Source: Oopsacas minuta (lineage: Eukaryota; Animalia; Porifera). From it: a stretch of 64,000 bases of DNA. The stretch is taken from the NCBI GenBank assembly GCA_024704765.1, contig JAKMXF010000221.1, forward strand, positions 558,001 to 622,000. The letters run 5' to 3'. This document shows positions 13,627 to 29,640 of the stretch, in pieces. The translations under genes were made by a program, and so were the position numbers. Each line of letters starts with the position of its first letter. The first letter of the stretch is position 1. The notes beneath the pieces are model-generated. The model ran no database searches and was not told the DNA's origin. It saw only the letters and a program-made list of their open reading frames with translations.

Positions 13627-15261
13627 TTATTTGAAGGAACTGGAATTTGAAATGGCCTCTTCAAGTGGGGAACATTGGTCCTTTGGGGTACAAGCTTTGC
13701 TAAAAACGTTCCAGAAGCGGAGTGTCTCATCGCCCGCACCGGTCACGATCGTTTGACCGTCCGGTGAGAGGGACAAGTACAAAACTCGGTTTGCATGTCC
13801 GGTCAGCTTGGCTACTTGTAGGAGAGAGGGATATCTCCAAATTAAAATCTCATTTTGTGAGAAACCATGTGTGGACACAATTTCCTGGCTATGAAGAGAC
13901 CAACACAAATTACAGACCTGTGATCCTGTGTCGATGTGGTTGAGTTGTTGACCTGTTGTCACATTCCAGAACCGGATTGTCTTATCCTGTGTTCCTCCTC
14001 CTGTAGCAAGGAGACCATATTGATGAGGAGACCACGCGATAGCTTTGATCGCGGCCCGATGTTCCACGAATTTGTGCACAGGAGCAAAGCTGTGCTCGTT
14101 CCATATAAGTAGTCGGTTATCATTGCCCCCTGAGGCTAGGTGCATTTTATCAGCTGACCATCTCAGACCGCAGACCTCTTGCGTGTGGAAATTGAGTTGC
14201 CGGACGGGACCTTCCCCCGATGAGGCTCGTGTGTCCCATTGGCATATAGATTTATCTCTACTACCGGAACATACAGTCGTGTTCTTCCATGCAAGGCTGC
14301 TTACCCGCTCAATGTGTCGGATATAGTTTGCCACGCGTTGATTTGTCTGTACATCCCAAATACTAACAATCCCCGTACGTGTACCCACACACAGAGAAGT
14401 ACCGGTCTCAGCCCAACCCACCGAAGTGACACAATCCCCTTCCGACTGGAAATCGTGCAGTTTGTTTACCTGGCTGTTAGCAGCATTCCATAGATACACA
14501 GACGTTCCTAAGCCAACCGCCAGCATATTAGAGGAGGACCAGTCCAAGAGGTTGAGGTAGTAATCGTCCTGAAGTTCAGGGGCGTCTAACACCTTGAAGG
14601 GGGTCTTAGAGATCTTCCGGGTTACCCTCTTAGGGGAGAGGAGCAGTTTTTGTGAGGAGGGTGTGAGGGGAGACAGGGAGGACGCTGTAGGACAGAAACC
14701 AGAACTAGGACGGGATAAACTGGACCTGAATTGTAAGATGGAAGGAGAGGACTGCTTTCTAGAGGGAGACATACCACACTTCCCATCTGTACTCTGTGAT
14801 AGGGTCATGGGGAGATCAGTTATGTCCGATCCTAAAATCTCATTCCTGAGGAGACACGAGTAGGTGACAGCTTCTTTATGGGACTCAGGGGAGGGTTCAC
14901 GGGGCTGTGAGCTAGATGGTGTAGCGGTCTGTTTTTGAGCGGAGTGTGATTCGTTCTCTGTGATCCCCAAGATGCTCGAAAGGATCGGTCGTGACCTGAC
15001 CGGGATAAAACGATCGCCGGAGACCGGTCGCTTCGAGGGGGACAATTCGGGAGGGGACAGGTTCAAGTTCCGCCGTATCGTGGGAGGCGTGTTAAAAAGG
15101 GTACTATGGGTCCGTTTACCAAGAGACGAGGGTCTATGAGGAGTCCTACTTTTCATTCTAGGTGTGAGAGGGGAGGAGGGGGGTGTGATAATTTTAGTTC
15201 CCCTCAAACTAAGCCTACGTTCGTACAATGGGTCCATTAGATTATCATTATAGAGAATCAA
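13627..15261 (-). CDS. FZR1: Fizzy-related APC/C co-activator Cdh1
   Basis: C-box DRFIPVR; QKLLLSPKRVTRKISKTPFKVLDAPELQDDYYLNLLDWS; WD40 repeats ending WRYPSL...GAGDETLRFWNVFSK, as in FZR1; intronless. Confidence 0.95.
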   Translation of the reverse strand: MILYNDNLMDPLYERRLSLRGTKIITPPSSPLTPRMKSRTPHRPSSLGKRTHSTLFNTPPTIRRNLNLSPPELSPSKRPVSGDRFIPVRSRPILSSILGITENESHSAQKQTATPSSSQPREPSPESHKEAVTYSCLLRNEILGSDITDLPMTLSQSTDGKCGMSPSRKQSSPSILQFRSSLSRPSSGFCPTASSLSPLTPSSQKLLLSPKRVTRKISKTPFKVLDAPELQDDYYLNLLDWSSSNMLAVGLGTSVYLWNAANSQVNKLHDFQSEGDCVTSVGWAETGTSLCVGTRTGIVSIWDVQTNQRVANYIRHIERVSSLAWKNTTVCSGSRDKSICQWDTRASSGEGPVRQLNFHTQEVCGLRWSADKMHLASGGNDNRLLIWNEHSFAPVHKFVEHRAAIKAIAWSPHQYGLLATGGGTQDKTIRFWNVTTGQQLNHIDTGSQVCNLCWSLHSQEIVSTHGFSQNEILIWRYPSLLQVAKLTGHANRVLYLSLSPDGQTIVTGAGDETLRFWNVFSKACTPKDQCSPLEEAISNSSSFK

Positions 15262-15862
15262 CCAATCAATTTGCTAGCTTTATGAATATTTATAGAAAAA
15301 ATGAATTCATTGTTTACGAAGTGTTGAGGCAAAACAAACAATAATATAATTAAGAAGGTGTGAAAAGTGGCATTTATGTATTGAAAAGTGTCCGATGAGG
15401 CAGTTTAGACACTAAACAACTGGCAGATGTTATTCTTTGACAGCTCTTTATAAAGTGGGATTATGTCACCTCGAAATGTGCCACCAAGTTGAATTGTCAG
15501 TTTTCCGTTCTGCCACTTAATGCAAGGTGTGAAGATTCCATTTCATAAAGCCGAACACCACATACTCTCTGGAGATATAGAAATATGACTCAAATAAGGA
15601 ATAGTGCCTTAGAATTGAAACCAATGAAGCGTTACTGTTGTCCATTGTATTCATATGTGTATAAATATTGGTTGCAATTTGGAAGTGATGTGACTCTATG
15701 GTCCAGTTGGTCAAGTTTCAACAAGTGCAAGTTTTGCAAAAAGGGTACGAATTTAGAGATGGACCAATCTGACCAATTTCGCTCCCTTTGGCTTGAGCTG
15801 AAAGGTGTTATTTCGAATTCTAGGAAGCCAAAACGAATTTATGTGGGAAGTAAATTCGTATA

Positions 15863-16331
15863 CAGTGAACGCCGGTTATAAGAACATCGTCGGGAACTGC
15901 ACATAAGTTCTGATAACCGGTATAGATGCCGGTTATGAAAACACTTCATTTAAACAGATTTGGATGTAGAAACCACTCTCATATCTACTAACACACTGGT
16001 AATGAGAACCAATTCGACCAATTTTAGTAATACACTAAGAGTGTTCTTATAACCGATAAAAATTCCATGGGGTAGAATACAAAAGATTCTGTAATTCAAG
16101 TTCTGGTCCTTATAACCGATAAAAATTCCATGGGGTAGAATACAAAAGATTCTGTAATTCAAGTTCTGGTCCTTATAACCGGTAAAAATTCCATGGGTAG
16201 AATACAAAAGATTCTGTAATTCAAGTTCTGGTTCTTATAACCGATAAAAATTCCATGGGGTAGAATACAAAAGATTCTGTAATTCAAGTTCTGGTTCTTA
16301 TAACCGGTGTTCTTATATCCGGTATCCACTG
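15863..16331. mobile_element. Tc1/mariner-type MITE with internal tandem amplification
   Basis: TIRs CAGTGAACGCCGGTTATAAGAACAT / GTGTTCTTATATCCGGTATCCACTG. TA on the left only. Related fragments at 28392-28512 and 30705-30800. Confidence 0.75.
16045..16310. repeat. 62-63 bp tandem repeat, about 4 copies
   Basis: Unit CCGATAAAAATTCCATGGGGTAGAATACAAAAGATTCTGTAATTCAAGTTCTGGTCCTTATAA starts at 16053, 16116, 16179 and 16241. Confidence 0.95.
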
Positions 16332-16734: not shown

Positions 16735-19700
16735 TCAAAAATATTGTGGAATGTCTTGCTGGTAGAATTCACGGGTCTGTGGGATTGGGAAATCAGTGTT
16801 GTATTGATAGGTGAGATCTTGTTCCGGGTGATAATATGGTATCTAAGGAATGTGTATATTATTTTAAATACGTGGTTATCAACACCTTTTCACCCGTGGA
16901 CCCTCTATGCCAATTTTAACACCTTCTGTTGATCCCTCCATTAAATACAAAATTTTGAGATCCTGTGTGGACTCCAGATTGGGAAAGGTGTGAAAATGGA
17001 GTTAGTCTAGGGAAGGCTTCCCAGATTGTGGCACACGGACAATTGCAAGTGGCACATATCACAGGACAGTGGCTCATTCAGGCACCCGTCTATGCTACCC
17101 AAAAAGGTGTGAAAATATGATTAATCTTAACTTACTTGCATAGGTTGTGAATTCATTTCATAATAGCTCTGTTTATCCGGATAGAATAGTGATGGTGTCA
17201 TTCTAGAATCAGGAAACCCATGTGTATGTGATATATGTTGATTTTGCTAAAAAGTAAACAATAATAACATGGTTGTGTTTATACAAACATGAAGAAGCGG
17301 GGTAGTTCCAAGTATTAACACTTCATGGTTCCAGTTCCAAAAATACTCACCTGCATTGGGACACAATTTCCGTAATAATCCATTTGTTGTTCTTGAATGT
17401 GTCCATAATTGTTGCCAGGGTTGTAGAAGGCTAACCCGGGGTCATCTGACATGTTGTAGTAATCAAGATCACCAATCTATACAAGTAAATAAGTAAATAT
17501 CAACACGGTAGTCTGTTTGTTTGTTTGTTTGTTTGTTTGTTTGTTTGTTTGTTTGTTTGTTTGTTTGTTTGCTTGTTTGCTTGTTTGTTTGTTTGTTTGT
17601 TTGTTTGATTGTTTGATTGTTTGTTTGTTTGTTTGTTTGTTTGCTTGTTTGCTTGCTTGTTGGTTAGTTTATTAGTTTGTTTACTTGTTTGTTTGTTTAA
17701 CTAACCGGTGTAACATTTCGAGGAGCTGTTGGGATATTAGCAGGAATAGTATCCATCAATCCGCCACTAATAATCTTGTTACCATCATAGTTTCTGAATT
17801 CATTAAATTTATGCAATGTCATAGTTACATATGCTTCTATATTCTCATCTTGACACCTCTGTAAGAGTTTAACTAACATATCAGAGCAGTTGGCTCTCTC
17901 CATTTCTTGCATATTGAACTGGTCCCCCGATAATTCGCAGAGACAGGCCACGGCATGTTCAAGTACCCTCTTGCGATCAGAAAACAACAACTAAAAAGGA
18001 ATAAACACAAATAATAACAATTTAAACAAAATGGGTCCAATTTGTATTGTCTTTATTCTAATACATTATGTGGACCCCCAGCTGTTGTTCGTGGATCACC
18101 ATTGACCTCATATGACCGCTATACTGTACATAACACCTAGCAATTAACAGGGGGACATGAGGACAGGGGATCAAACTTACCCGAATAATAACTGGTATAC
18201 TATCGTGTTTTCCAATTAGATTTCTATTAACGTGATCTTTTGCTAGAACCTCAACTGTTGATAATATTAGTACCAACACGTCTTCCATGTTCACACCTTC
18301 TTGTGTCGTCGTGTTGCCATGTTCTGTTGTCTAAATATATATAAACACATATAAAACAACTCCAAAAGGTGTTATATTATTCATATGAATATAAACACAC
18401 CTTGAATAGTATTTCAATTGCTCTTCGGAGGAGTTCTACCAGTTGTGGAATTACGGATAATTTCCTAAGTTCGATTCTGTTATGAGTGCTGATTGAGAGA
18501 TTCCGTAGAAGTCCTAAACAAGCCTAAATATATATAAACATAAATAGGAACAACAAATGGATAATAGCATATTTGTAAAATATGGGTCGAGAGGGCAACT
18601 TGAGTTCCTGTTGGGTCCAATTACTCTGAATGGCCGTTGGGATCAGATATCGAAAGGTATGAAATATGAATAATCGCTAACGGGTGTCAATATGCTGATT
18701 TTGCAAGATCGCACTGACGGAGCATTCCATGATATTTCTATGACAACGCAACTTACAAAAGAATGTGGATTATTACCTTAATTAGTGTCCAATGAGTTGT
18801 ATTCAAGAAAAGTTGCAAAATCACGTCCAGGCCTTTTTGCTCTCTAACCTCATTCTGGGCGAAATCTTCCCTCTCATGTTTGGAGGTAACGTGCCTCAGG
18901 GTGCAAATAACTGCCTCTAAGAGCTCATTTATCTGTGGCGAGTTGATGTTTATGTCCCGCTTTTGTGAGAATTCCAGAACAATATACAGAAGTATGTGTA
19001 TACCGTTATGATTACAAATTGCAGTCTACAAATGACAAATAATTGATAATCAGCAAACATATGTCTAAAGTGTTTGATGTTTGTAGTAGGTTAGGAAGCC
19101 AATGGGGGTCAATGAAGATACCAGAAAAATACCCTTTTTTGAATTGAACCTAATGATAATACTTGCTCTGCTATTCATTATTTAGACTTTGTTAAAGAAC
19201 ACTTGTAACTTTCCTGGAATAGCAACTGCTATCGTGGCAAGATCTAGCAAGCACATTCTTGTCTTTTCGGATAGGAAAATGCATTCATTAACAGTCAACT
19301 CGCGTTATAACGGAGCTAAAGGGACCGCGATAATCACTTGGATATGACCGATGGAATATACGTTACTTTGGGATCATATTTGTAGAATTTAAGACTTCGG
19401 TATATCCGTGTTGGGTGTAACGGGAGTTGACTGTTACTATCAATCTTACAATTATTCAAAATAATCTAAGTAAATTCCTTAAATTCCAACTGTAACCATT
19501 GTTACCGCCCCAATTCTGGCGCTCAATAATGAGACAACATTCCAATGATGTGCTCTATAGCAACAAATAATTATTGAATCCCTCCCATTTGATTTTCTAA
19601 TTTGTCTATTGCAATGAATTTTTGTGTTTGTATCATTTTGCTAGGAATTATTGTGTATACCCCGCCCATTCAAGTCAGAAAGATTATGTAGGAGTGATTA

Positions 19701-22700
19701 CAGCAAAACGTATATGTAAATATTAGCAATTTGATATCTTGCTTTATTTCCCGATTTCCTGGGATAATTAGTAAGGAATTATTTTATTTAATCATATCCT
19801 ATACGCTGACGTTATATACAAGCTTTCCTAGTTACCACGATGGTGTTATGTCATGCTGCTAGGCGGGCGGGGGATTAATCATGAGGCATATTTGCCACCT
19901 CCCCGGGAAAATATTTCTGGATATTTTGGAGGTGAAATAGGGGGAAACATTAGGAGAATATTCAAAATTCAGAGATTTATGAAGGAAATTGTTTAAGGTG
20001 TTGGTAAGCATGAAGAGCAGTGGCGGTCCCAGCGTGAGGGCATTAGCCACCGGCATAGCCAGATCCTCAGACCATCACTCCCCATTACATATTAAGACAA
20101 GCAAAAATACTGGCACCGCCCCTGATGAAGAGAGAGGGGTCTGTTACTCACCTTATTAATGGGATTATTGCAAGTAATATTGGATAATATTCCTACAATG
20201 TACATCATACTAGTTGTATCTTCCTTCATTCGTAATAGATTCAATAGCATAGCTATTAACGACTCCAAATTATCCTACAAACAAATAAACATAAATACAT
20301 TCCACATACACTTCTCGTTGCTATGATAAATAGATTGGAATGTTAACTAACCTCTGGTCTAACTACATCAGATAGTGTCAGTAAGGGACGGAGATACAGC
20401 TGGACAATACGAGGACTGTTACTCGTGAGGTGTTTGGAGAGTATAGGAATCCCACCAGCCTATATTTGGATAATTGAATTAAGTAATTAAGTATGGAAAT
20501 GTGACGAAATGTGTCGACCTATCAGATTTGAGGGTTTATAGACTGATATTCTATTGGTTGAATAGCTTATACACATTTTAACACCTAAACTGACACTGTC
20601 TAATGGACTAGCTTACTTGTACGATAGCTTGCTTATGGTTCGGACAAGTAGTGAGGACTTTTATCAATCTTCCAACAATCCAAATTAACTTCTCAAAATT
20701 ACTGTCAGCTAGGATTTTCACAAGTAACACAGATCCGTTATAGTTGTATATTATTTGTTTTGTTTCTTCATTATTTATTGCCAGTAAATGTAAACAATCT
20801 GCTATGATAGCTAATACTCTCTCTCTGTGTCCGTTTAATAATCTGACTAGATGCTGTACTCCTCCTATGATAGTAAATTGTTTATTTATCTGTTTACTTG
20901 TGTGCGTATTTGTTTGTATATTTGTTTACTTGTTTGTTTATTTGTTTGCATAATTGTTTACTTGTTTGCTTATTTGCTTGTTTGTGTATTTGTATGTTGT
21001 TTATTTGTATTTTTGTACATTTGCTTATGTATTTATTTGTTTACTTGTCTGCTTATTCGTTTGTTTATTTGTTTATTATATACTTAACAACAAACCTCTA
21101 TTCCTGAATTCCTCCATATACACGCTGGCATTGTGACGACATCCTAGCATATTGTGTAAACACGTAATTGCAAATACAATGACATGCTCAACATCTGATG
21201 TCAACAACAACATCTAAATCAAAGAATAATAAAGACATTCATCTGAGTAATATCACAAAATTCCATAGCAACAAGAATATACCATAGTTATGTCAAACGC
21301 GTTTCAAACATTCAACACTAGATGTGATAAATAAAACTTACGATAAAAGCTAGTCCATCGCATGTGTGGATCATTTTCACGCCCAGTGGATTAACAGAGA
21401 GGGAGCTTATGGCACTAGACGAGTATTTGGCCGCTTCATCGTTAACATTGTGCCCAATAGCTTGTATCAGAGCTGTGAGGACAAGGGGAGTGGAGAGGAG
21501 AGCATTTCTAGAGGCCTCTTTCTTCGCCAAGGTGGCAATAACCTATACACATATTGATAATCATACAAAGAACTTTGTATTAATGTATTCTTGATATAGT
21601 GTGGAATTCATGGATATGATTTGGTGGTGGCAAGTTGCAGGAAAGTGTTTCATTGTGTCATATCAAAATTGTGTCGCTCTAACCAACAATTCCATACTCA
21701 CAATGAAATCAGACAAAACTAAAGGCGAAAACTTTCAAGACAAATTATGTAAATACACTTAATTCGCACTCAACAAATAACAATACAGTAACATAGCTAA
21801 TTCAATTATAGTTCTATCATCCTAGCAAAAAAGATATGAAAAATTACTGGAATCCCAAAGCGATAATTATGTCATCTTTTCAAGTTCATAATACAATCAA
21901 ATTGGCTTTATACAAATTATGTGGTGGAAAGGAATTCAACTTACCAATGACGCTTTTTCTATGATTTCTCTGTTGGTGTCTTTTAGCACTTTTAGTAGTT
22001 CTGGAATTACTTGTGTAGTAATCTCTGTGTCTGTCTATAGTAAGATATATGATAAGATATATATGAGACAACAAATCCGCTACAGACGGGAGGGAACTTT
22101 TGGAACGGAGTTGGTCTCAGACAAATGAAACTCCACAAATTAAAGAAAGGGAGACAGTTTGTACCTCAATATACAATTAAAGGACAAAAGTAATCGACCA
22201 TTTTAGGATTGCAAATATTTCGTGTTCTTATACATTAATATCCGTCAATCTCCATAAATGAATCTTGTTCACACGGTAAGTGGTCGAATACTTTTATCCT
22301 TTAACTTTATATATCTCTATACTAGGAGAATACAATTGGAACTGGAACTTAATTAGTAAACTTCATATTCCAAGAAATGAATCTTGTTTAACTCAATATT
22401 AGACAGCATAGAAGCCGGAGCATTGATATAAGGTTTTGTAGTCAAATAAGCCACCTTTTGTCAAAATGAATACAAACATATGGCACTTATATAGTCAAAT
22501 CAAATTCCATGAAAGAAACTAACAACACAGCCCAGTTTGAATTCTTGAAAATGAATATACAAAATTCGAACTTTGTTATCAGAAAATTACAAGTGTTTAG
22601 GAGCTCTGGTTTCTAAGGAAAACTTTGGAAATATGTATCCTTATTCTAACAGTTATATGCCTACCTTGTAGAGAAGGAGGTTTGTAATGGATTTTTTTAT

Positions 22701-24337
22701 TGCCTGTGATGATCTTGTCAACCGTTGGACATTTGTTTGGTGATCTGTGGGCGTCGATGCACAGTTCCTGTCCGAGTGAGACTCTGTGAATAAGGCAGAT
22801 TTTAATCTCTCCCCCTGTCCGTTTGTCCTCTTCGACCCCAAATTAGCTAAAAACAAACAAACAAGTAAACAGAATTCAGGTTTGATAATTCAATCAATGA
22901 ATCCTGAAAATTGAACTTTCTTTGATTAGATAATACTCAAATTTGATTGGTTAAGATGATTACAGCGTGACCAATCAAATCAGAGTAACTTACCAATCAG
23001 CTGATAAACACAAATGACCAGATTGTGTAATATAAATAAATAAATATTCCTCACTTTTTGACCCGTTATAGGGCTGGTGCCATACCCCTTGGACCGCTTG
23101 GTCCCATGCGTACACAACTGGACCATCAACATTGTCCTCATCGTCATCAAATCTTGGGCTGGCGGATCGGGTAACAATCCCGGAATCATGGGTTACTGGT
23201 TCTGATTGAAATTTGTCCATTACTTCTGAAGGTGCTAAAAATATATCATAAAATATGTTGTTGTCTATTCGTACTTTTACTCGGTAGCGTGGATACACAG
23301 TTGGACTTAAGGAATGTTCCGATTTATCTAATTTTAATAAATTCAGAAATGTAGGATTCGACTACAAAAATATATTTAAAATTCGGCTTGCAATTATTCT
23401 GTTTTTATATACATAAAATGCATTCAAAGTAAACCCCGAACTATAAAGGAACTTTATGAAACTAAAAACACAATAAAATACAGTAGAATCTCCGCAATAA
23501 GGCCACAGGTGCATCGGGTTACTTCTCCAGAAATGGAAGCATAGATATAATTCCACATTACAAAATGTGATGGTAGCGATGTAAGCGGACTCTGCATTGG
23601 TATAAGAAATAATCACAGATTACAACTTGAAACGTAGAAATAACAAAAGTGACAGGTAAAGAAATCGGGTCAAATTTATTTCTAACCAAAACATGACCGA
23701 TATAATTGTTCTTTTCAGGAAAAGCTGACACAAATTTTTCTTATGGCCTGCGCCATGTTTTGCGGCCAAATCGATATAATTGGAAATCAGAATTGCAGAG
23801 ATATTCCATCGAACAGACCGCAGTGTATTGTTAACATAATTACTGTGTATTATGCTCTGCAGATATGAAACCGTTACTAATTAGTGCTCAACTTGCAACT
23901 TTGCATTTTAAGTCAAATGGAAATGGAAATGTGAATACTGGCAAGAGGGTCAATTTATAGTTCCGGATCGATGGTTTAATTAGGGTATTTGGGGGCAATT
24001 ATTGGAGAAACATAATTTGTAAAATATGGAAACAAATTTGAGTTCTTAAAAGTGGAAAATTCGAATTCAAAATTTTGTTAAAATGCAACACAAAAAAGTT
24101 TGTTCATTTTTGTTAGTTTGTTTATTATTGTTTGTTGTTTGTTTATTAGTACAAATTTAATTCAACCTACAAATATTACACCCAAAAATATCAAAATTTC
24201 TGTAAAATCGTGTGAAATAATAAACAACAAAAAACTCACAATTATTAGTCCTGTGTGGAGAATACTGTCTTGAAGATGTGAAGTGGAATTGTCTGATATT
24301 ATCCTCGATTTGAGATAATCTCAGTTCGTAATCTCTC
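16735..24337 (-). CDS. CTNNB1: Divergent beta-catenin (armadillo), at least 15 exons, ~796 aa from this point
   Basis: Phase-consistent GT-AG exons: 24337-24240, 23234-23055 (DSGIVT degron), 22846-22665 (TNVQRLTRSSQ), 22034-21945, 21542-21342 (KKEASRNAL), 21213-21096, 20864-20617, 20459-20352, 20274-20152 (GILSNITCNN), 19025-18777 (LRHVTSKH..AQNEVR), 18523-18401, 18330-18181 (EGVNMEDV), 17990-17706, 17476-17351, 16842-16735. Collinear with human beta-catenin over all ARM repeats. The first and last listed exons are less certain. Confidence 0.9.
17514..17697. repeat. (GTTT)n microsatellite with GCTT/GATT variants
   Basis: About 185 bp tract abutting the donor site at 17705 of a beta-catenin intron. 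Confidence 0.95.
19291..19434. mobile_element. Tc1/mariner-type MITE, TA-flanked
   Basis: TIRs ACAGTCAACTCGCGTTA / TAACGGGAGTTGACTGT; TA at 19289-19290 and 19435-19436. Relatives at about 39410-39530 and 47400-47543. Confidence 0.8.
20018..20124. mobile_element. hAT-type MITE (107 bp) with perfect 8-bp TSD
   Basis: TIRs CAGTGGCGGTCCCAG / CTGGCACCGCCCCTG; identical flanks ATGAAGAG at 20010-20017 and 20125-20132. Confidence 0.9.
20878..21075. repeat. Degenerate (GTTT/ATTT)n tract filling a beta-catenin intron
   Basis: Imperfect TTTG/TTTA repeats between exons 21213-21096 and 20864-20617. They generate the spurious CLFVCLF-type ORFs in the track. Confidence 0.9.
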
Positions 24338-24375
24338 CTATAGATATGCAACAGATTATTAAATATGTTCTATAA

Positions 24376-24383
<8 letters not shown>

Positions 24384-24422
<39 letters not shown>
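24384..24422. repeat. (TA)n microsatellite
   Basis: Uninterrupted TA run. Confidence 0.95.
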
Positions 24423-24423
<1 letters not shown>

Positions 24424-26290
24424 TGCTGCTGCTGTTACCTATCGTAACTGGCATAAGATACACAGTGGACAAGTTGGGCCATTATTTAAATATAGTCCTG
24501 TTGTTATAATGGTTACTCAATCGGTATCACTCCGATTAATAAGAACCCCCCCTCCCCCTGATAAAGCGAATATATTTTGAACGTCAGTTGGTGTTCGTAT
24601 TAACGATTTTAGGCGGGTAATAGCATATTATTAATAATCGGCGCAAAAGAAAATTCGGAAGTATTCTCTGACGCTTTAAGCGGGAAATGAAGCTTAACAT
24701 ACGTAGAAACAGGTTTGTGGATTTTAAGCGGGCAATTATCATTTTATCAAGTTTTAAGCGGGAAATAAAGGATGCCTAACTTTGATAAAAGTAATATCGA
24801 TAAAAATAGGCGGTTAATAACAAAATTCCAGTTTGTTTATTACATACATTGTTGTGTGAAAATTAGAAACACGGTAAATAATAGGGACATCATAGTTCCA
24901 AACTCGAGACTAACCAATACACTGAATGCCCTGAAGGCTTGTAAATTGCATAAATTGGAATTGAAACTATTTTCTAATATTTCATAAACACAAAATTGAC
25001 CTCAAAATAATCTAAGAAAGGAATGTAATTGTGAAGGAAATATTCATACAAAGAATAAACAAAAATTGTATGTGTTTGTATTTATTTGAATAGCTTATAT
25101 TGTGAAGATGGTAATAGGCGCTCAATTATGGATATCACACAATATATTCTATCGGAATATGAAGAGAAATGTATTAGAATATTGTTTACGTAGGCGCGTA
25201 TTCCAAAATATTTTCAATTTGTAAATAATAGCAATCTGTGTATGCTAAAGTTTATATGAAATAAACACTAATAAGTTTGAAGATTTTAAACCCTGTGTCA
25301 CTCAATGAAACCTGTCACCATGTGTATACTGGCTGAAGTGGCGTGAAGTGGCACAATGTGTCAGGAGTTGAAAATATTTAGACTTAACAGTAGGATTTGC
25401 TATTTTAAACAAATTGTATTGGAAACATACCTACGTGCACATGTTACCAGAGGGAGTATACCTCACCCGAGTTCTACTGTATTCTACAGATTAAATACCC
25501 AATGGGGAGTGATGGTTTGTACCAACAATCTGGAGTGCGGACAGAGGGAGGGACAATCAAGAATAGAACAAGTTAAACCTCAAAAGTGCAATGAGTTTCA
25601 GCTTATTAATATTACAAATAATATCATAATATTATGACTTAAGGCAGGTGGATAATTGAACAATAACATCTGGAAAAGGAGGAGACAAGTGATCACAATT
25701 ACGAAAATTACAAGTTCATCTGTGGGTATATTGTTTGTGGTGTAGCTAACCAGAACCTTACCCCAATTACATTGCATAATACAGTCAGTATATAATTCAC
25801 ACTCTGACCCACTTCACAAGTACTACAAATATGAAAAAGCATAATTGGAGTTAATTGCCTTCCACTGATCAAAATATTAATCTTCTGATTAAAATTAGAT
25901 ACGCGTTAACAATGAATCTGACTTGTTATGTGGTTCGAACATAAAAACCCACGGACTGCAATATATTCCAACAGCTGAATTGTACATTACGTATTCGGAA
26001 TAATTCAGAATCACCTAATGAACTACGCTATCATCTTTCTTTCTTGTTTTACCTAGAGATTCTTGTTCTAAGTTTCCAAGAAGTAACGCAATCATGGAGA
26101 GGGAGTGTAAAGAGAATGCGTAAAATTAAATGAACAATAAACACAAACACGTGTTCATAGGAATGTTACGATAGTTTAATAATTATTCAAAGCTAATTCA
26201 AATTTGAAAATATCACTGTTGCACCCGAATAGTTCAATATTCTGTTACCAAACGAATATCAGTATTGGGTTAAGCAAATATTCATGAATA

Positions 26291-26526
26291 CCGTAAACGG
26301 GGGCTACTTTGGGCCACTGGGTTTGCTTTAGCCCAAATATGAAAGCTCCAAAGAAACTAGATTGGATTCAGTATTGTACTTGAAATGACTTACCAAGTTT
26401 TTAACGAGTTTCCAAATATCGGTAGACAGTTTCGAATACAAATACAATATCTATTCGATACGTAAGCAAATTTTAATATTTGGGCTAAAGCAAACCCAGG
26501 GGGCCAAAGTAGCCCCCAGTTTACGG
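26291..26526. mobile_element. Tc1/mariner (Tigger-like) MITE with ~50 bp TIRs, TA TSD
   Basis: CCGTAAACGGGGGCTACTTTGG..CTGGGTTTGCTTTAGCCCAAATAT and its reverse complement at the right end; TA at 26289-26290 and 26527-26528. Confidence 0.9.
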
Positions 26527-28585
26527 TACTGATATTCGGTTCGATCGGTTTCAACCTTGGAAATGATATAAAATTGAGAGATAAACATAAATAAATCTAC
26601 ATTTTCATTTAAACTTTGGAGTCTTCCAGCTGGCATGAAAATCAAATCAAATCCGTATGTATTAATAAAAAATCAGCACCCATTGCTTAATATAATTTTC
26701 AGTTTAAAGCTAATACTATTTATGATACAATAATTGAGGACAACAGGTAGGAAACTAGGAGGAGCTATGGTCGCAATGACATAAGGACAATTGAAAGTCT
26801 AATCCACAAACTCGTTAAAATAATCAAGAAAATACTTGTGTACCAGGCATGTTGTTAGGTTGGTTATAGTACATTGTTGAAGGTTCATTATTTTGGTAAA
26901 AAACATATTTCTCTTGAGAATTCGGAAATCGTCAAATTGTATGAAAGACTGTGACCAGGTTTTAACGACGCTACATGCGGTATTATTTGCAAACCCTAAT
27001 GTCACCCAACATTATAGTTCTGATAGAAATACGTCGTGTTAATTAATAAAGTGCTAAATATAGAAATAAGAAATGAGTGGTAGATATTGGCAATGAAAAG
27101 TTTGTTTATTATTGTTGTTTACTGTCACGAATATGTAACAATATTCAAGCAGGGAAAATGAAAAACCACGGAGGCTTGTCCAAACGCTCCATCTCACAAA
27201 ATACCAAATAAGCAAATACCTTAATCTACTTAGTACCAATTACCAGATCGATTACAAGATATTGAGTAATGATAATGTATACGTGAATATCCATTAGCCT
27301 ACCAACCAGGTGCTGTATAATATAAACAAAGAGTATTGGACTAGAATTATGCACAGATAGTTAACAAATTAAGGGAAGGGCCGCCCTAGAATAGTACTAA
27401 AATGTATATATGCAAAAAGGGTCTCTTCTCAATTCTGAATATTATTGAAAGTTTGTGGAATTGATTCTCATTATTTGCAATTAAAATATTTGAACGAATA
27501 AACAATTCAGGGATTAAGTTCAAGCGTATGTCAAAGTGTTAAGTGTTACATTACATCAAAATTGGGTAATTAGGACGACCAGACCGGGAGTTAATTAGAT
27601 TATAATTTGTACTTGGAAGAGTGGTATTAAGAGAGGAAACAGACAACAATCTGATTGGCTAGCTACTGCTTAATTGGTATAATTATAAGTGTCAAATCCA
27701 TTAATTGTCCTATTTCTGTCTAGCAACACTCAAGGAAGATAGGAATTTCAAATACGAGGCTGAATGTAATGGAACTTCTAGTCGTATACATATTTTCATA
27801 TTGGCACGCTGTATGAATGGAAAAATGCTCCAACTTCCTTATTTTGTCATTTTCTAGAGTAAATACGAACACTTATGTTATGAAACTGAATCTGTAATAA
27901 AAATCAATTTTAGTTCCAACGCGCGCTCATTCTAAGACAAAACTAATTAGCGCAGTTGTTTATACTTAACACCATCAGTTTCAAGTGATGATTGCACATA
28001 TCAACATACTCTTTGAATAGCACATTCCTGTGTTGTCAAGGAGAATTTTTTCGTGTTTTGGCTAAGTTGTTGAATAGTTCTTTCAAAGAAGACGTATTAA
28101 CGGCCAATCTCATTTTCGGTGACGTAACTTCTGCAATAATTACTTTGCCTCAAAAGAATAATTCTCGAATTGTTAATGAGAATTCTCAGCAGAGTTAACG
28201 AAACTATAATACTTGATATTTATCTGGCTAATACAAGTCTAAGAGTGTCAAAATCTGATATTTCGAGGTTAACCTAGACGTATCTTACGTTAAAATAGAA
28301 CACGTGTAATGTATTATACGTTATACGCGTATTATACAGCTGAAGTTTAGGACAATTCAGAAATGGAATAAATATTGCAGGAAAAGACTTACAGTGTATA
28401 CTGGTTATAAGAACACCCTTGGGAGTAGCAATACATGCTCTTATAACCGGTATAATATAAAGAAATATGTGAGAACCGTTTTCCAGAGGATGGTGCTTAT
28501 ATCCGGTGTGTATATATACACATCTTGTTTTTAAAATAAACAAACAAACAAACAAACAAACAAACAAACACACAATCAAATTTAC

Positions 28586-28691
28586 CTGTTGTACGGGTCA
28601 GTATCAATACCAGCAAGCGTGATGGCCTTCTCCTCATGGAGCCGCTGAAGAAGTTGTCGAGCCGTCATTCTAGTTCGATCGTAGTCAAATT
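28586..28691 (-). CDS. Coding exon, probably an upstream exon of the beta-catenin gene
   Basis: Clean acceptor TTTACAG and donor AG|GTAAAT. Open frame FDYDRTRMTARQLLQRLHEEKAITLAGIDTDPYN. The phase-2 end matches the phase-2 start of exon 24337. The start codon exon was not found. Confidence 0.5.
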
Positions 28692-28957: not shown

Positions 28958-29640
28958 TAAGACCGACAAGTATTTGGAAAAATAATTATGTAAACAACAA
29001 ACAAACAAACAAACAATCAATCAATCAAACAAACTATTTTAAGTAATTTCGTCTAGAAACATTCCTCTCTCTTTTTATTTCTTTCTCTTGGGTTATTCAA
29101 AGAAACATGGTTCATACGTAATCACAAACTGTGCCGATTTTTCTGACAAATATTGAGGGCCAATGAGGCTAATATCCCGCCAGAAATTGCTTGCCCTGTA
29201 TTATTATTGTCCAGTTTAATATATAATAATGATTTATCTTCACAGACGGAGACCTTCCCTAATTCACGGAACGGATCGGACAAGTTTTCTGAAGAAAATT
29301 CAAATTAGTTGCCTTGTAAATCACAGAACATTATAAACAGGACGGGACATAAGGTACTAACCTAGCGGACATCGAGGGACGTTGCATATTTGTATTAAAC
29401 TGGACAATAATAATTCAGGGCAAGCAATTTCTGGCGGGATATTAGCCTCATTGGCCCTCAATATTTGTCAGAAAAATCGGCACAGTTTGTGATTACGTAT
29501 GAACCATGTTTCTTTGAATAACCCAAGAGAAAGAAATAAAAAGAGAGAGGAATGTTTCTAGACGAAATTACTTAAAATAGTTTGTTTGATTGTTTGTTTG
29601 TTGTTTACATAATTATTTTTCCAAATACTTATTGGTCTTA
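28958..29640. repeat. Long near-perfect inverted repeat (arms 28958-29221 and 29393-29640, 171 bp spacer)
   Basis: The arms are reverse complements apart from a few substitutions and the length of an AAAC/AATC microsatellite. Confidence 0.95.

What the first reader, a model, noticed from the sequence alone, without database searches (positions are those of the whole stretch)
20352..20864. Selective loss of APC-contact residues in the armadillo groove
Human CLWTLRNLSD (W383, R386, N387) aligns to YLRPLLTLSD, giving W to R, R to L and N to T. K292 becomes R and K270 is lost. The cadherin/TCF charged buttons K312 (ETKQ) and K435 (PINK), plus H260, K335, W338, K345, R469/H470 and Y654, are retained. 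W383 and R386 are established hot spots for APC binding. The pattern suggests a beta-catenin that keeps adhesion/TCF binding but has uncoupled from the destruction-complex scaffold.
Basis: partly seen in the sequence, partly recalled or inferred. Interest (0 to 1): 0.7.

Follow-up and report, generated by a model that had tools for sequence, protein, structure and literature searches.

The report
Glass-sponge beta-catenin groove rewrite, known
The stretch is two exons of the single, already annotated beta-catenin gene of the glass sponge Oopsacas minuta; the reported residue changes are real and shared by all glass sponges examined, but two of the three were published in 2018, and they are better read as part of a very fast-evolving protein in a Wnt-less animal than as a targeted loss of APC binding.

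Summary
Observation confirmed. Window 20352-20864 (minus strand) holds exons 8 and 9 of the 17-exon beta-catenin gene of Oopsacas minuta; every exon matches NCBI's 860-aa protein exactly. An ungapped alignment gives W383R, R386L and N387T, plus N380L, C381Y, K292R and loss of K270. K312, K335, W338, K345, K435, R469, H470 and Y654 are kept.

The same L-Y-x-R-x-L-L-T helix face occurs in four glass-sponge taxa. It is held by purifying selection: pN 0.13-0.24 against pS 0.63-0.89.

R386L and N387T in two hexactinellids were published in 2018, listed there as E-cadherin contacts. W383R and the APC angle were not.

Vertebrate mutagenesis and tumour data do link W383, R386 and N387 to APC binding. 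But published work says sponge and cnidarian APCs lack beta-catenin-binding repeats. Oscarella (a sponge) and Nematostella (a cnidarian) nevertheless keep W, R and N.

This protein is only 37% identical to vertebrate beta-catenin, and 47% of near-invariant columns are changed in both hexactinellids. Three losses are therefore not beyond background (P about 0.11). The unusual feature is that all six TCF/shared contact residues are kept (P about 0.008). The DSG degron is also conserved.

Verdict: ordinary to moderately interesting, largely known.

The parts
16738..28668 (-). Coding span of the beta-catenin gene: 17 coding exons encoding 860 aa.
   Evidence: Every exon translation tiles NCBI 'beta-catenin [Oopsacas minuta]' P0151 residues 1-860 exactly, with AG/GT boundaries.
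20617..20864 (-). Exon 8 (aa 318-400; human 277-359; ARM repeats 4-5). Carries K292R, Y306I, K312, K335, W338, R342 and K345.
   Evidence: phmmer hits to solved beta-catenin/plakoglobin chains at E 1e-18 to 4e-20, ungapped. Residue states.
20460..20616 (-). Intron between exons 8 and 9 (GTAAGC...ATATAG).
20352..20459 (-). Exon 9 (aa 401-436; human 360-395; ARM repeat 6).
   Evidence: Ungapped alignment to plakoglobin and beta-catenin. The exon boundaries are the same in L001 and L003.
20367..20402 (-). Helix 3 of ARM 6, QLYLRPLLTLSD (Om 420-431). L421 = N380, Y422 = C381, R424 = W383 (20388-20390), P425 = T384, L427 = R386 (20379-20381), T428 = N387 (20376-20378).
   Evidence: The AlphaFold2 model keeps a continuous helix at model residues 247-261 with block pLDDT 95-97.
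20758..20760 (-). Codon of K353, equivalent to the human K312 charged button. Retained.
20152..20154 (-). Codon of K477, equivalent to the human K435 charged button (the last codon of exon 10). Retained.
23170..23187 (-). DSGIVT core of the N-terminal phosphodegron (aa 77-82). It is context for the destruction question and is the subject of a separate finding.
   Evidence: Conserved in Vazella, L001 and L003.

Best explanation
These are exons 8-9 of the only beta-catenin gene of the glass sponge Oopsacas minuta. The protein keeps the full 12-repeat armadillo fold. In the central ligand groove it keeps the two charged buttons (K312, K435), N426 and N430, R469 and H470, and K508. It also keeps Y142, Y654 and a DSG-type degron. 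One face of helix 3 of repeat 6 has been rewritten: N380L, C381Y, W383R, R386L, N387T. This rewrite arose before the sampled glass-sponge lineages split and has since been held by purifying selection.

Shown: gene identity, alignment register, class-wide conservation, overall fast divergence, and retention of the buttons.

Inferred: the groove still binds an extended acidic peptide of the common DxxxxPhi...E type, most plausibly the cadherin tail, whose motif is reported conserved in hexactinellids. The aromatic residue would now pack on L386/Y381/L380 rather than on the aliphatic part of R386. The positive charge would be moved one helical turn to position 383.

Such a surface would probably bind bilaterian APC 15/20-aa repeats poorly. 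But sponge APC and Axin are reported never to have had those motifs. The change is therefore better explained as remodelling or co-evolution of a shared ligand surface, after the Wnt, Dishevelled and possibly TCF constraints were lost in this syncytial lineage, than as a specific uncoupling from the destruction complex.
For: Identity: exact match of all exons to P0151.
Fold: AlphaFold2 mean pLDDT 90.6; Foldseek target-normalised TM 0.89-0.95, rmsd about 2-3 A to solved beta-catenins.
Register.
Class-wide conservation: O. minuta, Vazella, L001/L002 and L003 all read Q-L-Y-(L/I)-R-x-L-L-T-L-S-D, while position 384 varies (P/L/L/I). On exon 9, pS is 0.63-0.89 and pN 0.13-0.24, with different codons encoding the same derived residues.
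Rarity: 'LRNLSD' is kept in 115 of 115 canonical beta-catenins and in nearly all of about 60 diverse 50%-identity cluster representatives.
Background divergence: 37% identity against 66-67% for Oscarella and 78% for Nematostella; 138 of 291 near-invariant columns changed in both hexactinellids. The six TCF/shared contact residues (K312, N426, K435, R469, H470, K508) are kept 6 of 6 (P about 0.008).
Literature: R386L/N387T in two hexactinellids, and the cadherin groove-binding motif conserved there (PMC5968619). Glass sponges lack Wnt, Dvl and Wls; APC and Axin lack beta-catenin-binding regions across sponges (PMC5684314). The aromatic residue of the consensus motif packs on R386 (PMC5342195).
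Against: No binding data exist for any hexactinellid protein. I could not retrieve the O. minuta cadherin, TCF, APC or Axin sequences, so the ligand side rests on published statements. Conservation of the derived residues could reflect helix packing rather than ligand binding. The background statistics use post-hoc residue sets and a canonical panel dominated by bilaterians. The two ENA assemblies are unnamed, and L001/L002 is close to Vazella, so the sampling amounts to about three well-separated lineages, probably not including Amphidiscophora.
Confidence: 0.6

Rival explanations
1. One reading: a selective loss of APC-contact residues produced a beta-catenin that keeps cadherin and TCF binding but has been uncoupled from the APC/Axin destruction scaffold.
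For: W383A, R386A and K345A lose APC binding. K335, W383 and N387 tumour mutations reduce APC binding while signalling persists. R386G is neutral for LEF1 and ICAT. The Axin hot spots F253 and K292 are also changed. Glass-sponge APC and Axin lack the beta-catenin-binding regions.
Against: APC and Axin lack those regions in other sponges and in cnidarians too, yet those animals keep W383, R386 and N387. The three losses are within the 47% background. K345 and K335 are retained. The degron is conserved. R386 and N387 are shared cadherin/TCF contacts. The TCF beta-catenin-binding domain is not predicted in glass sponges.
Confidence: 0.15
2. Neutral drift: after Wnt signalling was lost, the repeat-6 surface lost its function and drifted. 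Its present conservation reflects only helix packing and stability, with no ligand meaning.
For: About half of all otherwise invariant positions are changed. Several signalling interfaces (BCL9 D164, ICAT F660, Axin F253) are eroded in the same way.
Against: The five derived residues are identical across lineages whose synonymous sites are near saturation, while the neighbouring solvent position 384 varies freely. They lie on the groove-facing helix 3, between fully conserved repeats 5 and 7 (ARM7 has only 2 of 16 invariant columns changed).
Confidence: 0.15
3. New partner: the rewritten face is a gain, adapted to a hexactinellid-specific ligand or regulator, for example a component of the syncytial plugged junctions or a re-registered TCF or cadherin motif.
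For: Purifying selection acts on the derived residues. The pattern is rare among all sampled beta-catenins. Hexactinellids have unusual tissue organisation and lack conventional adherens junctions.
Against: No candidate partner has been identified, and there is no direct evidence of any kind. A Panagrellus HMP-2-like beta-catenin reached R386L independently, which suggests the site is simply tolerant once signalling duty is removed.
Confidence: 0.1

Closest known systems
Canonical beta-catenin / Armadillo (CTNNB1), including other sponge orthologues such as Oscarella pearsei beta-catenin 1 (P0008)
   Same: 12 ARM repeats (target-normalised TM 0.89-0.95 to solved structures). DSG degron. Y142, K312, K435, N426, N430, R469, H470, K508 and Y654. 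Single copy. Annotated as beta-catenin.
   Different: Only 37% identical in the ARM domain, against 66-67% for Oscarella. The repeat-6 helix face is rewritten. F253, K292, D164 and F660 are changed. By published account it has no S45 equivalent and no C-terminal DTDL motif; the protein ends ...DIPQYF.
Human tumour-associated beta-catenin variants in ARM repeats 5/6 (K335, W383, N387), and the alanine hot-spot mutants W383A and R386A
   Same: The same positions are altered. Those variants lose or reduce APC binding while retaining transcriptional activity.
   Different: They are single somatic or engineered changes in an otherwise canonical protein that has a repeat-bearing APC partner. Here five changes are fixed in a lineage whose APC is reported to lack such repeats.
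Nematode HMP-2 (humpback-2), the adhesion-dedicated beta-catenin (PDB 4R0Z, 4R10)
   Same: W383 is replaced: V in C. elegans HMP-2 and K in the Panagrellus orthologue P0140. P0140 also has R386L and N387R, plus F253Q and K292R. This shows a beta-catenin relieved of Wnt duty can lose these residues.
   Different: HMP-2 arose by paralogue subfunctionalisation, and C. elegans HMP-2 still keeps R386 and N387. Hexactinellids have one gene and keep K312, whereas P0140 has Q there.

Membership tests
beta-catenin / Armadillo family | Central domain of 12 armadillo repeats forming a superhelix | tested here: met
   AlphaFold2 model with pLDDT 90.6. Foldseek top 50 hits are all beta-catenin or plakoglobin, target-normalised TM 0.89-0.95. 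Pfam Arm matches on single exons fall just below the curated cutoff (18.5-18.8 bits against 20.6).
beta-catenin / Armadillo family | Charged buttons K312 and K435 and the groove residues N426, N430, R469, H470 | tested here: met
   All are retained in O. minuta, Vazella, L001 and L003.
beta-catenin / Armadillo family | N-terminal DSGxxS-type phosphodegron | tested here: met
DSGIVT at aa 77-82, conserved in four hexactinellid taxa.
beta-catenin / Armadillo family | Orthology: best matches are beta-catenins; one copy per genome | tested here: met
   PDB and 1.8-billion-representative searches return beta-catenin/plakoglobin. The database holds one O. minuta protein. A single copy is reported in PMC5968619.
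beta-catenin / Armadillo family | C-terminal PDZ-binding DTDL motif | tested here: not met
   P0151 ends ...QQDIPQYF. Its absence was published in 2017. The motif is not universal in the family.
APC-binding-competent beta-catenin (bilaterian type) | The hot-spot residues K345, W383 and R386 | tested here: not met
   K345 is kept; W383R and R386L. Hot-spot status is taken from PMC7776579.
APC-binding-competent beta-catenin (bilaterian type) | A partner APC carrying 15-aa/20-aa beta-catenin-binding repeats | not testable with these tools
   I could not fetch the O. minuta APC. PMC5684314 reports it truncated and lacking that region, as in demosponges and cnidarians.
Axin-binding-competent beta-catenin | The hot-spot residues F253, H260 and K292 | tested here: inconclusive
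   F253V/M, H260 kept, K292R/N. Poriferan Axin is reported to lack its beta-catenin-binding domain.

The most novel reading that the evidence does not exclude
The five-residue rewrite of ARM-6 helix 3 (L380, Y381, R383, L386, T387), fixed and selectively maintained across glass sponges, is an adaptive new docking surface that co-evolved with a hexactinellid-specific or re-registered ligand. On this reading glass-sponge beta-catenin is a natural 'APC-blind' variant, at the very positions hit in human tumours, and a handle on what beta-catenin does in an animal with no Wnt.
Probability: 0.2. Interest if true: 0.55.

Novelty: already known. Interest (0 to 1): 0.3.

Why it matters
Glass sponges are the one animal group reported to have lost Wnt, Dishevelled and Wntless while keeping beta-catenin, GSK3, TCF, and truncated APC and Axin. 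What their beta-catenin still binds bears on which of its functions, adhesion or signalling, is older and which is separable. This check shows the repeat-6 change is class-wide and constrained. It also shows that the signal in the sequence is the retention of the charged-button and asparagine groove, not a targeted loss of APC contacts. That narrows the experiment to a few pull-downs. The core observation (R386L, N387T) and the Wnt-loss context were already published in 2017-2018, so the added value is modest.

Tried and rejected
(1) Assembly, annotation or register artefact. Rejected: ungapped alignments from three methods agree, all exons match the deposited protein exactly, and the same residues occur in four taxa.
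(2) A divergent paralogue alongside a canonical copy. Rejected: only one O. minuta beta-catenin was found, and a single copy is published.
(3) Pro425 breaks helix 3. Not supported: the model keeps the helix at high confidence, and the Pro is specific to O. minuta, with L, L and I in the other taxa.
(4) HMP-2 as a full analogue. Only partial: C. elegans HMP-2 keeps R386 and N387; only the Panagrellus orthologue loses them.
(5) Reading the primary structural papers for residue-level contacts (Spink 2001, Bao 2012, Liu 2020). These are not held in the library, so contact roles rest on secondary sources.
(6) Earlier scan notes on APC, Axin, TCF or cadherin in this genome: none found.
(8) My first automatic mapping of L003 residues picked an intron read-through HSP for exon 9. 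It was corrected from the proper HSP and by direct translation.

Full report
WHAT IS THERE

The window is AT-rich eukaryotic DNA. The finding lies on the minus strand in a multi-exon armadillo-repeat gene.

I searched the exons one by one, by reference. Exon 8 (20617-20864) hits solved beta-catenin and plakoglobin chains at E 1e-18 to 4e-20. Exon 9 (20352-20459) aligns to the same chains without a gap.

A search of 1.84 billion cluster representatives with exon 8 led to a Vazella pourtalesii transcriptome protein (P0003/P0155). Through that I reached NCBI 'beta-catenin [Oopsacas minuta]', P0151, 860 aa. All 17 coding exons that I delimited tile P0151 exactly (28668 down to 16738, AG/GT boundaries).

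The window is therefore O. minuta, and the gene is already annotated. An earlier scan note (s1-284950) had named the species; the exact protein match confirms it.

After the exon-wise searches I used the deposited protein id.

With 2z6h numbering (chain index + 137) and with Xenopus P0235, whose landmark residues carry human numbers, the substitutions are:
- W383R (Om R424)
- R386L (L427)
- N387T (T428)
- K292R
- K270 to S, next to a small insertion and so less certain

Retained: H260, K312, K335, W338, R342, K345, N426, N430, K435, R469, H470, K508 and Y654.

With these, one whole face of helix 3 of repeat 6 is rewritten. F253V, F293V, Y306I, D164N and F660H are also changed.

An AlphaFold2 model of residues 170-750 has mean pLDDT 90.6. 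It keeps this helix continuous (model 247-261) despite the O. minuta-specific Pro425. It superposes on solved beta-catenins at target-normalised TM 0.89-0.95.

IT IS A CLASS-WIDE, CONSTRAINED TRAIT

The four glass-sponge taxa read:
- Vazella: QLYLRLLLTLSD
- an ENA assembly close to Vazella (L001/L002): the same
- a more distant ENA assembly (L003): QLYIRILLTLSD
- O. minuta: QLYLRPLLTLSD

The exon boundaries are identical. On this exon pS is 0.63-0.89 and pN is 0.13-0.24, and different codons encode the same derived residues. The derived residues are therefore under purifying selection.

By contrast, 'LRNLSD' is present in 115 of 115 canonical beta-catenins. These include the sponge Oscarella (P0008, P0169) and Nematostella (P0222). 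It is also present in nearly all of about 60 very diverse 50%-identity cluster representatives.

The only other exception I saw is a Panagrellus HMP-2-like protein, with W383K, R386L and N387R. C. elegans HMP-2 itself has V at 383 but keeps R386 and N387.

PRIOR PUBLICATION

Belahbib et al. [quoted passage not shown] The exceptions they name are R386 and N387, replaced by L and T in two hexactinellids. They do not mention W383 or APC. They also report a single gene copy per species and a conserved cadherin groove-binding motif in hexactinellids.

Schenkelaars et al. 2017 (PMC5684314) report the following:
- Glass sponges lack Wnt, Dishevelled, Wntless and FzdA.
- APC is truncated and lacks the beta-catenin/GSK3/Axin-binding region, as it also does in demosponges and cnidarians.
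- Poriferan Axin lacks its beta-catenin-binding domain.
- The TCF beta-catenin-binding domain is not predicted.
- The GSK3 motif of beta-catenin is divergent.

THE INTERPRETATION

The vertebrate premise is sound:
- K345A, W383A and R386A lose APC binding (PMC7776579).
- K335, W383 and N387 tumour mutations reduce APC binding and weakly activate signalling (cited in PMC8018973).
- R386G does not affect ICAT binding or LEF1-dependent transcription (PMC5342195).

Three things weaken the inference.

First, R386 is the surface on which the aromatic residue of the common ligand motif packs. R386 and N387 are also catalogued as cadherin contacts. They are shared residues, not private to APC.

Second, animals whose APC is reported to lack the repeats (Oscarella, Nematostella) still keep W383, R386 and N387. 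APC cannot be what maintains these residues outside Bilateria, and their loss cannot mark an APC-uncoupling event.

Third, the loss is not selective:
- The ARM domain is 37% identical to the vertebrate protein, against 66-67% for Oscarella and 78% for Nematostella.
- Of 291 columns at least 97% conserved in the canonical panel, 138 are changed in both hexactinellids and 129 are kept in both.
- Losing all of W383, R386 and N387 has P about 0.11 under that background.
- Keeping all six TCF/shared hot spots (K312, N426, K435, R469, H470, K508) has P about 0.008.

These are post-hoc sets and small numbers. Still, they point to selective retention of the button-and-asparagine groove, not selective loss.

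ARM7 is the best-kept repeat (2 of 16 invariant columns changed). ARM2 and ARM12 are the most eroded (72-73%).

The degron DSGIVTR(S/T)xSP is conserved in all four taxa. This argues against abandonment of regulated destruction.

MOST LIKELY MECHANISM

This part is inferred. The protein probably still grips an extended acidic peptide through K312 and K435 and the asparagine ladder. The most plausible ligand is the cadherin tail. The aromatic residue of the motif would sit on a more hydrophobic L386/Y381/L380 patch. The lost guanidinium would be partly replaced by R383, one helical turn away on the same face.

The protein would bind bilaterian-type APC repeats poorly, but its own APC never offered them.

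The rewrite is best seen as remodelling of a shared surface once Wnt-pathway constraints disappeared. It goes together with erosion of the BCL9 (D164N), Axin (F253V/M, K292R/N) and ICAT (F660H/Q) contacts.

LIMITS

- I could not fetch the O. minuta APC, Axin, TCF or cadherin, so the partner side rests on published statements.
- The primary structure papers were not in the library.
- Roles given for N261, N415, N430, C429, C466, R474, R515 and N516 are from my own memory of the structures, not from a source read here.

VERDICT

The result is largely already known and of modest interest.

Noticed in passing
window 17514-17698, 20878-21077, 24097-24144, 28534-28580, 28992-29034: Introns of the beta-catenin gene are largely filled by (TGTT)n/(AAAC)n-type low-complexity arrays lying directly next to splice sites. 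The whole intron between exons 7 and 8 is such an array. A T/G-rich array also follows the homologous exon in L003.
   Followed up: partly
window 16046-16308: A 63-bp unit repeated 4.2 times at 97% identity, in the spacer between the beta-catenin stop codon (16738) and the Cdc20/Fizzy gene.
   Followed up: no
window 13630-15273 (-) and L002:8020-8806: An intronless Cdc20/Fizzy WD40 gene lies just downstream of beta-catenin (Pfam E 2e-124). The same adjacency is seen in another hexactinellid assembly, so the local synteny is conserved.
   Followed up: partly
P0151 residues 202 (D164N), 197 (L159V), 291 (F253V), 333 (K292R), 711 (F660H): Residues documented as BCL9, Axin and ICAT contacts are also replaced in both O. 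minuta and Vazella. This suggests general erosion of signalling interfaces.
   Followed up: partly
P0151 residue 707 (human A656): By ungapped alignment anchored on Y654, A656 is T in hexactinellids. Belahbib 2018 names only R386 and N387 as hexactinellid exceptions in the cadherin-contact list.
   Followed up: no
L001 and L002 (ENA ERZ25069837, contigs at 97x and 72x): Two near-identical beta-catenin loci sit on separate long contigs of one assembly. Whether they are haplotigs or a recent duplication was not resolved.
   Followed up: no
P0140 (Panagrellus redivivus, HMP-2-like): This nematode adhesion-type beta-catenin independently shows W383K, R386L and N387R, plus K312Q. C. elegans HMP-2 keeps R386 and N387.
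   Followed up: partly
window 28585-28668 and 24240-24337; L003:1039-1194: The annotated protein has a 60-aa N-terminal extension encoded by two far-upstream exons. Its second part (R(D/E)YELRLSQIED...SPHRTNN) is conserved in L003. Its function is unknown.
   Followed up: no
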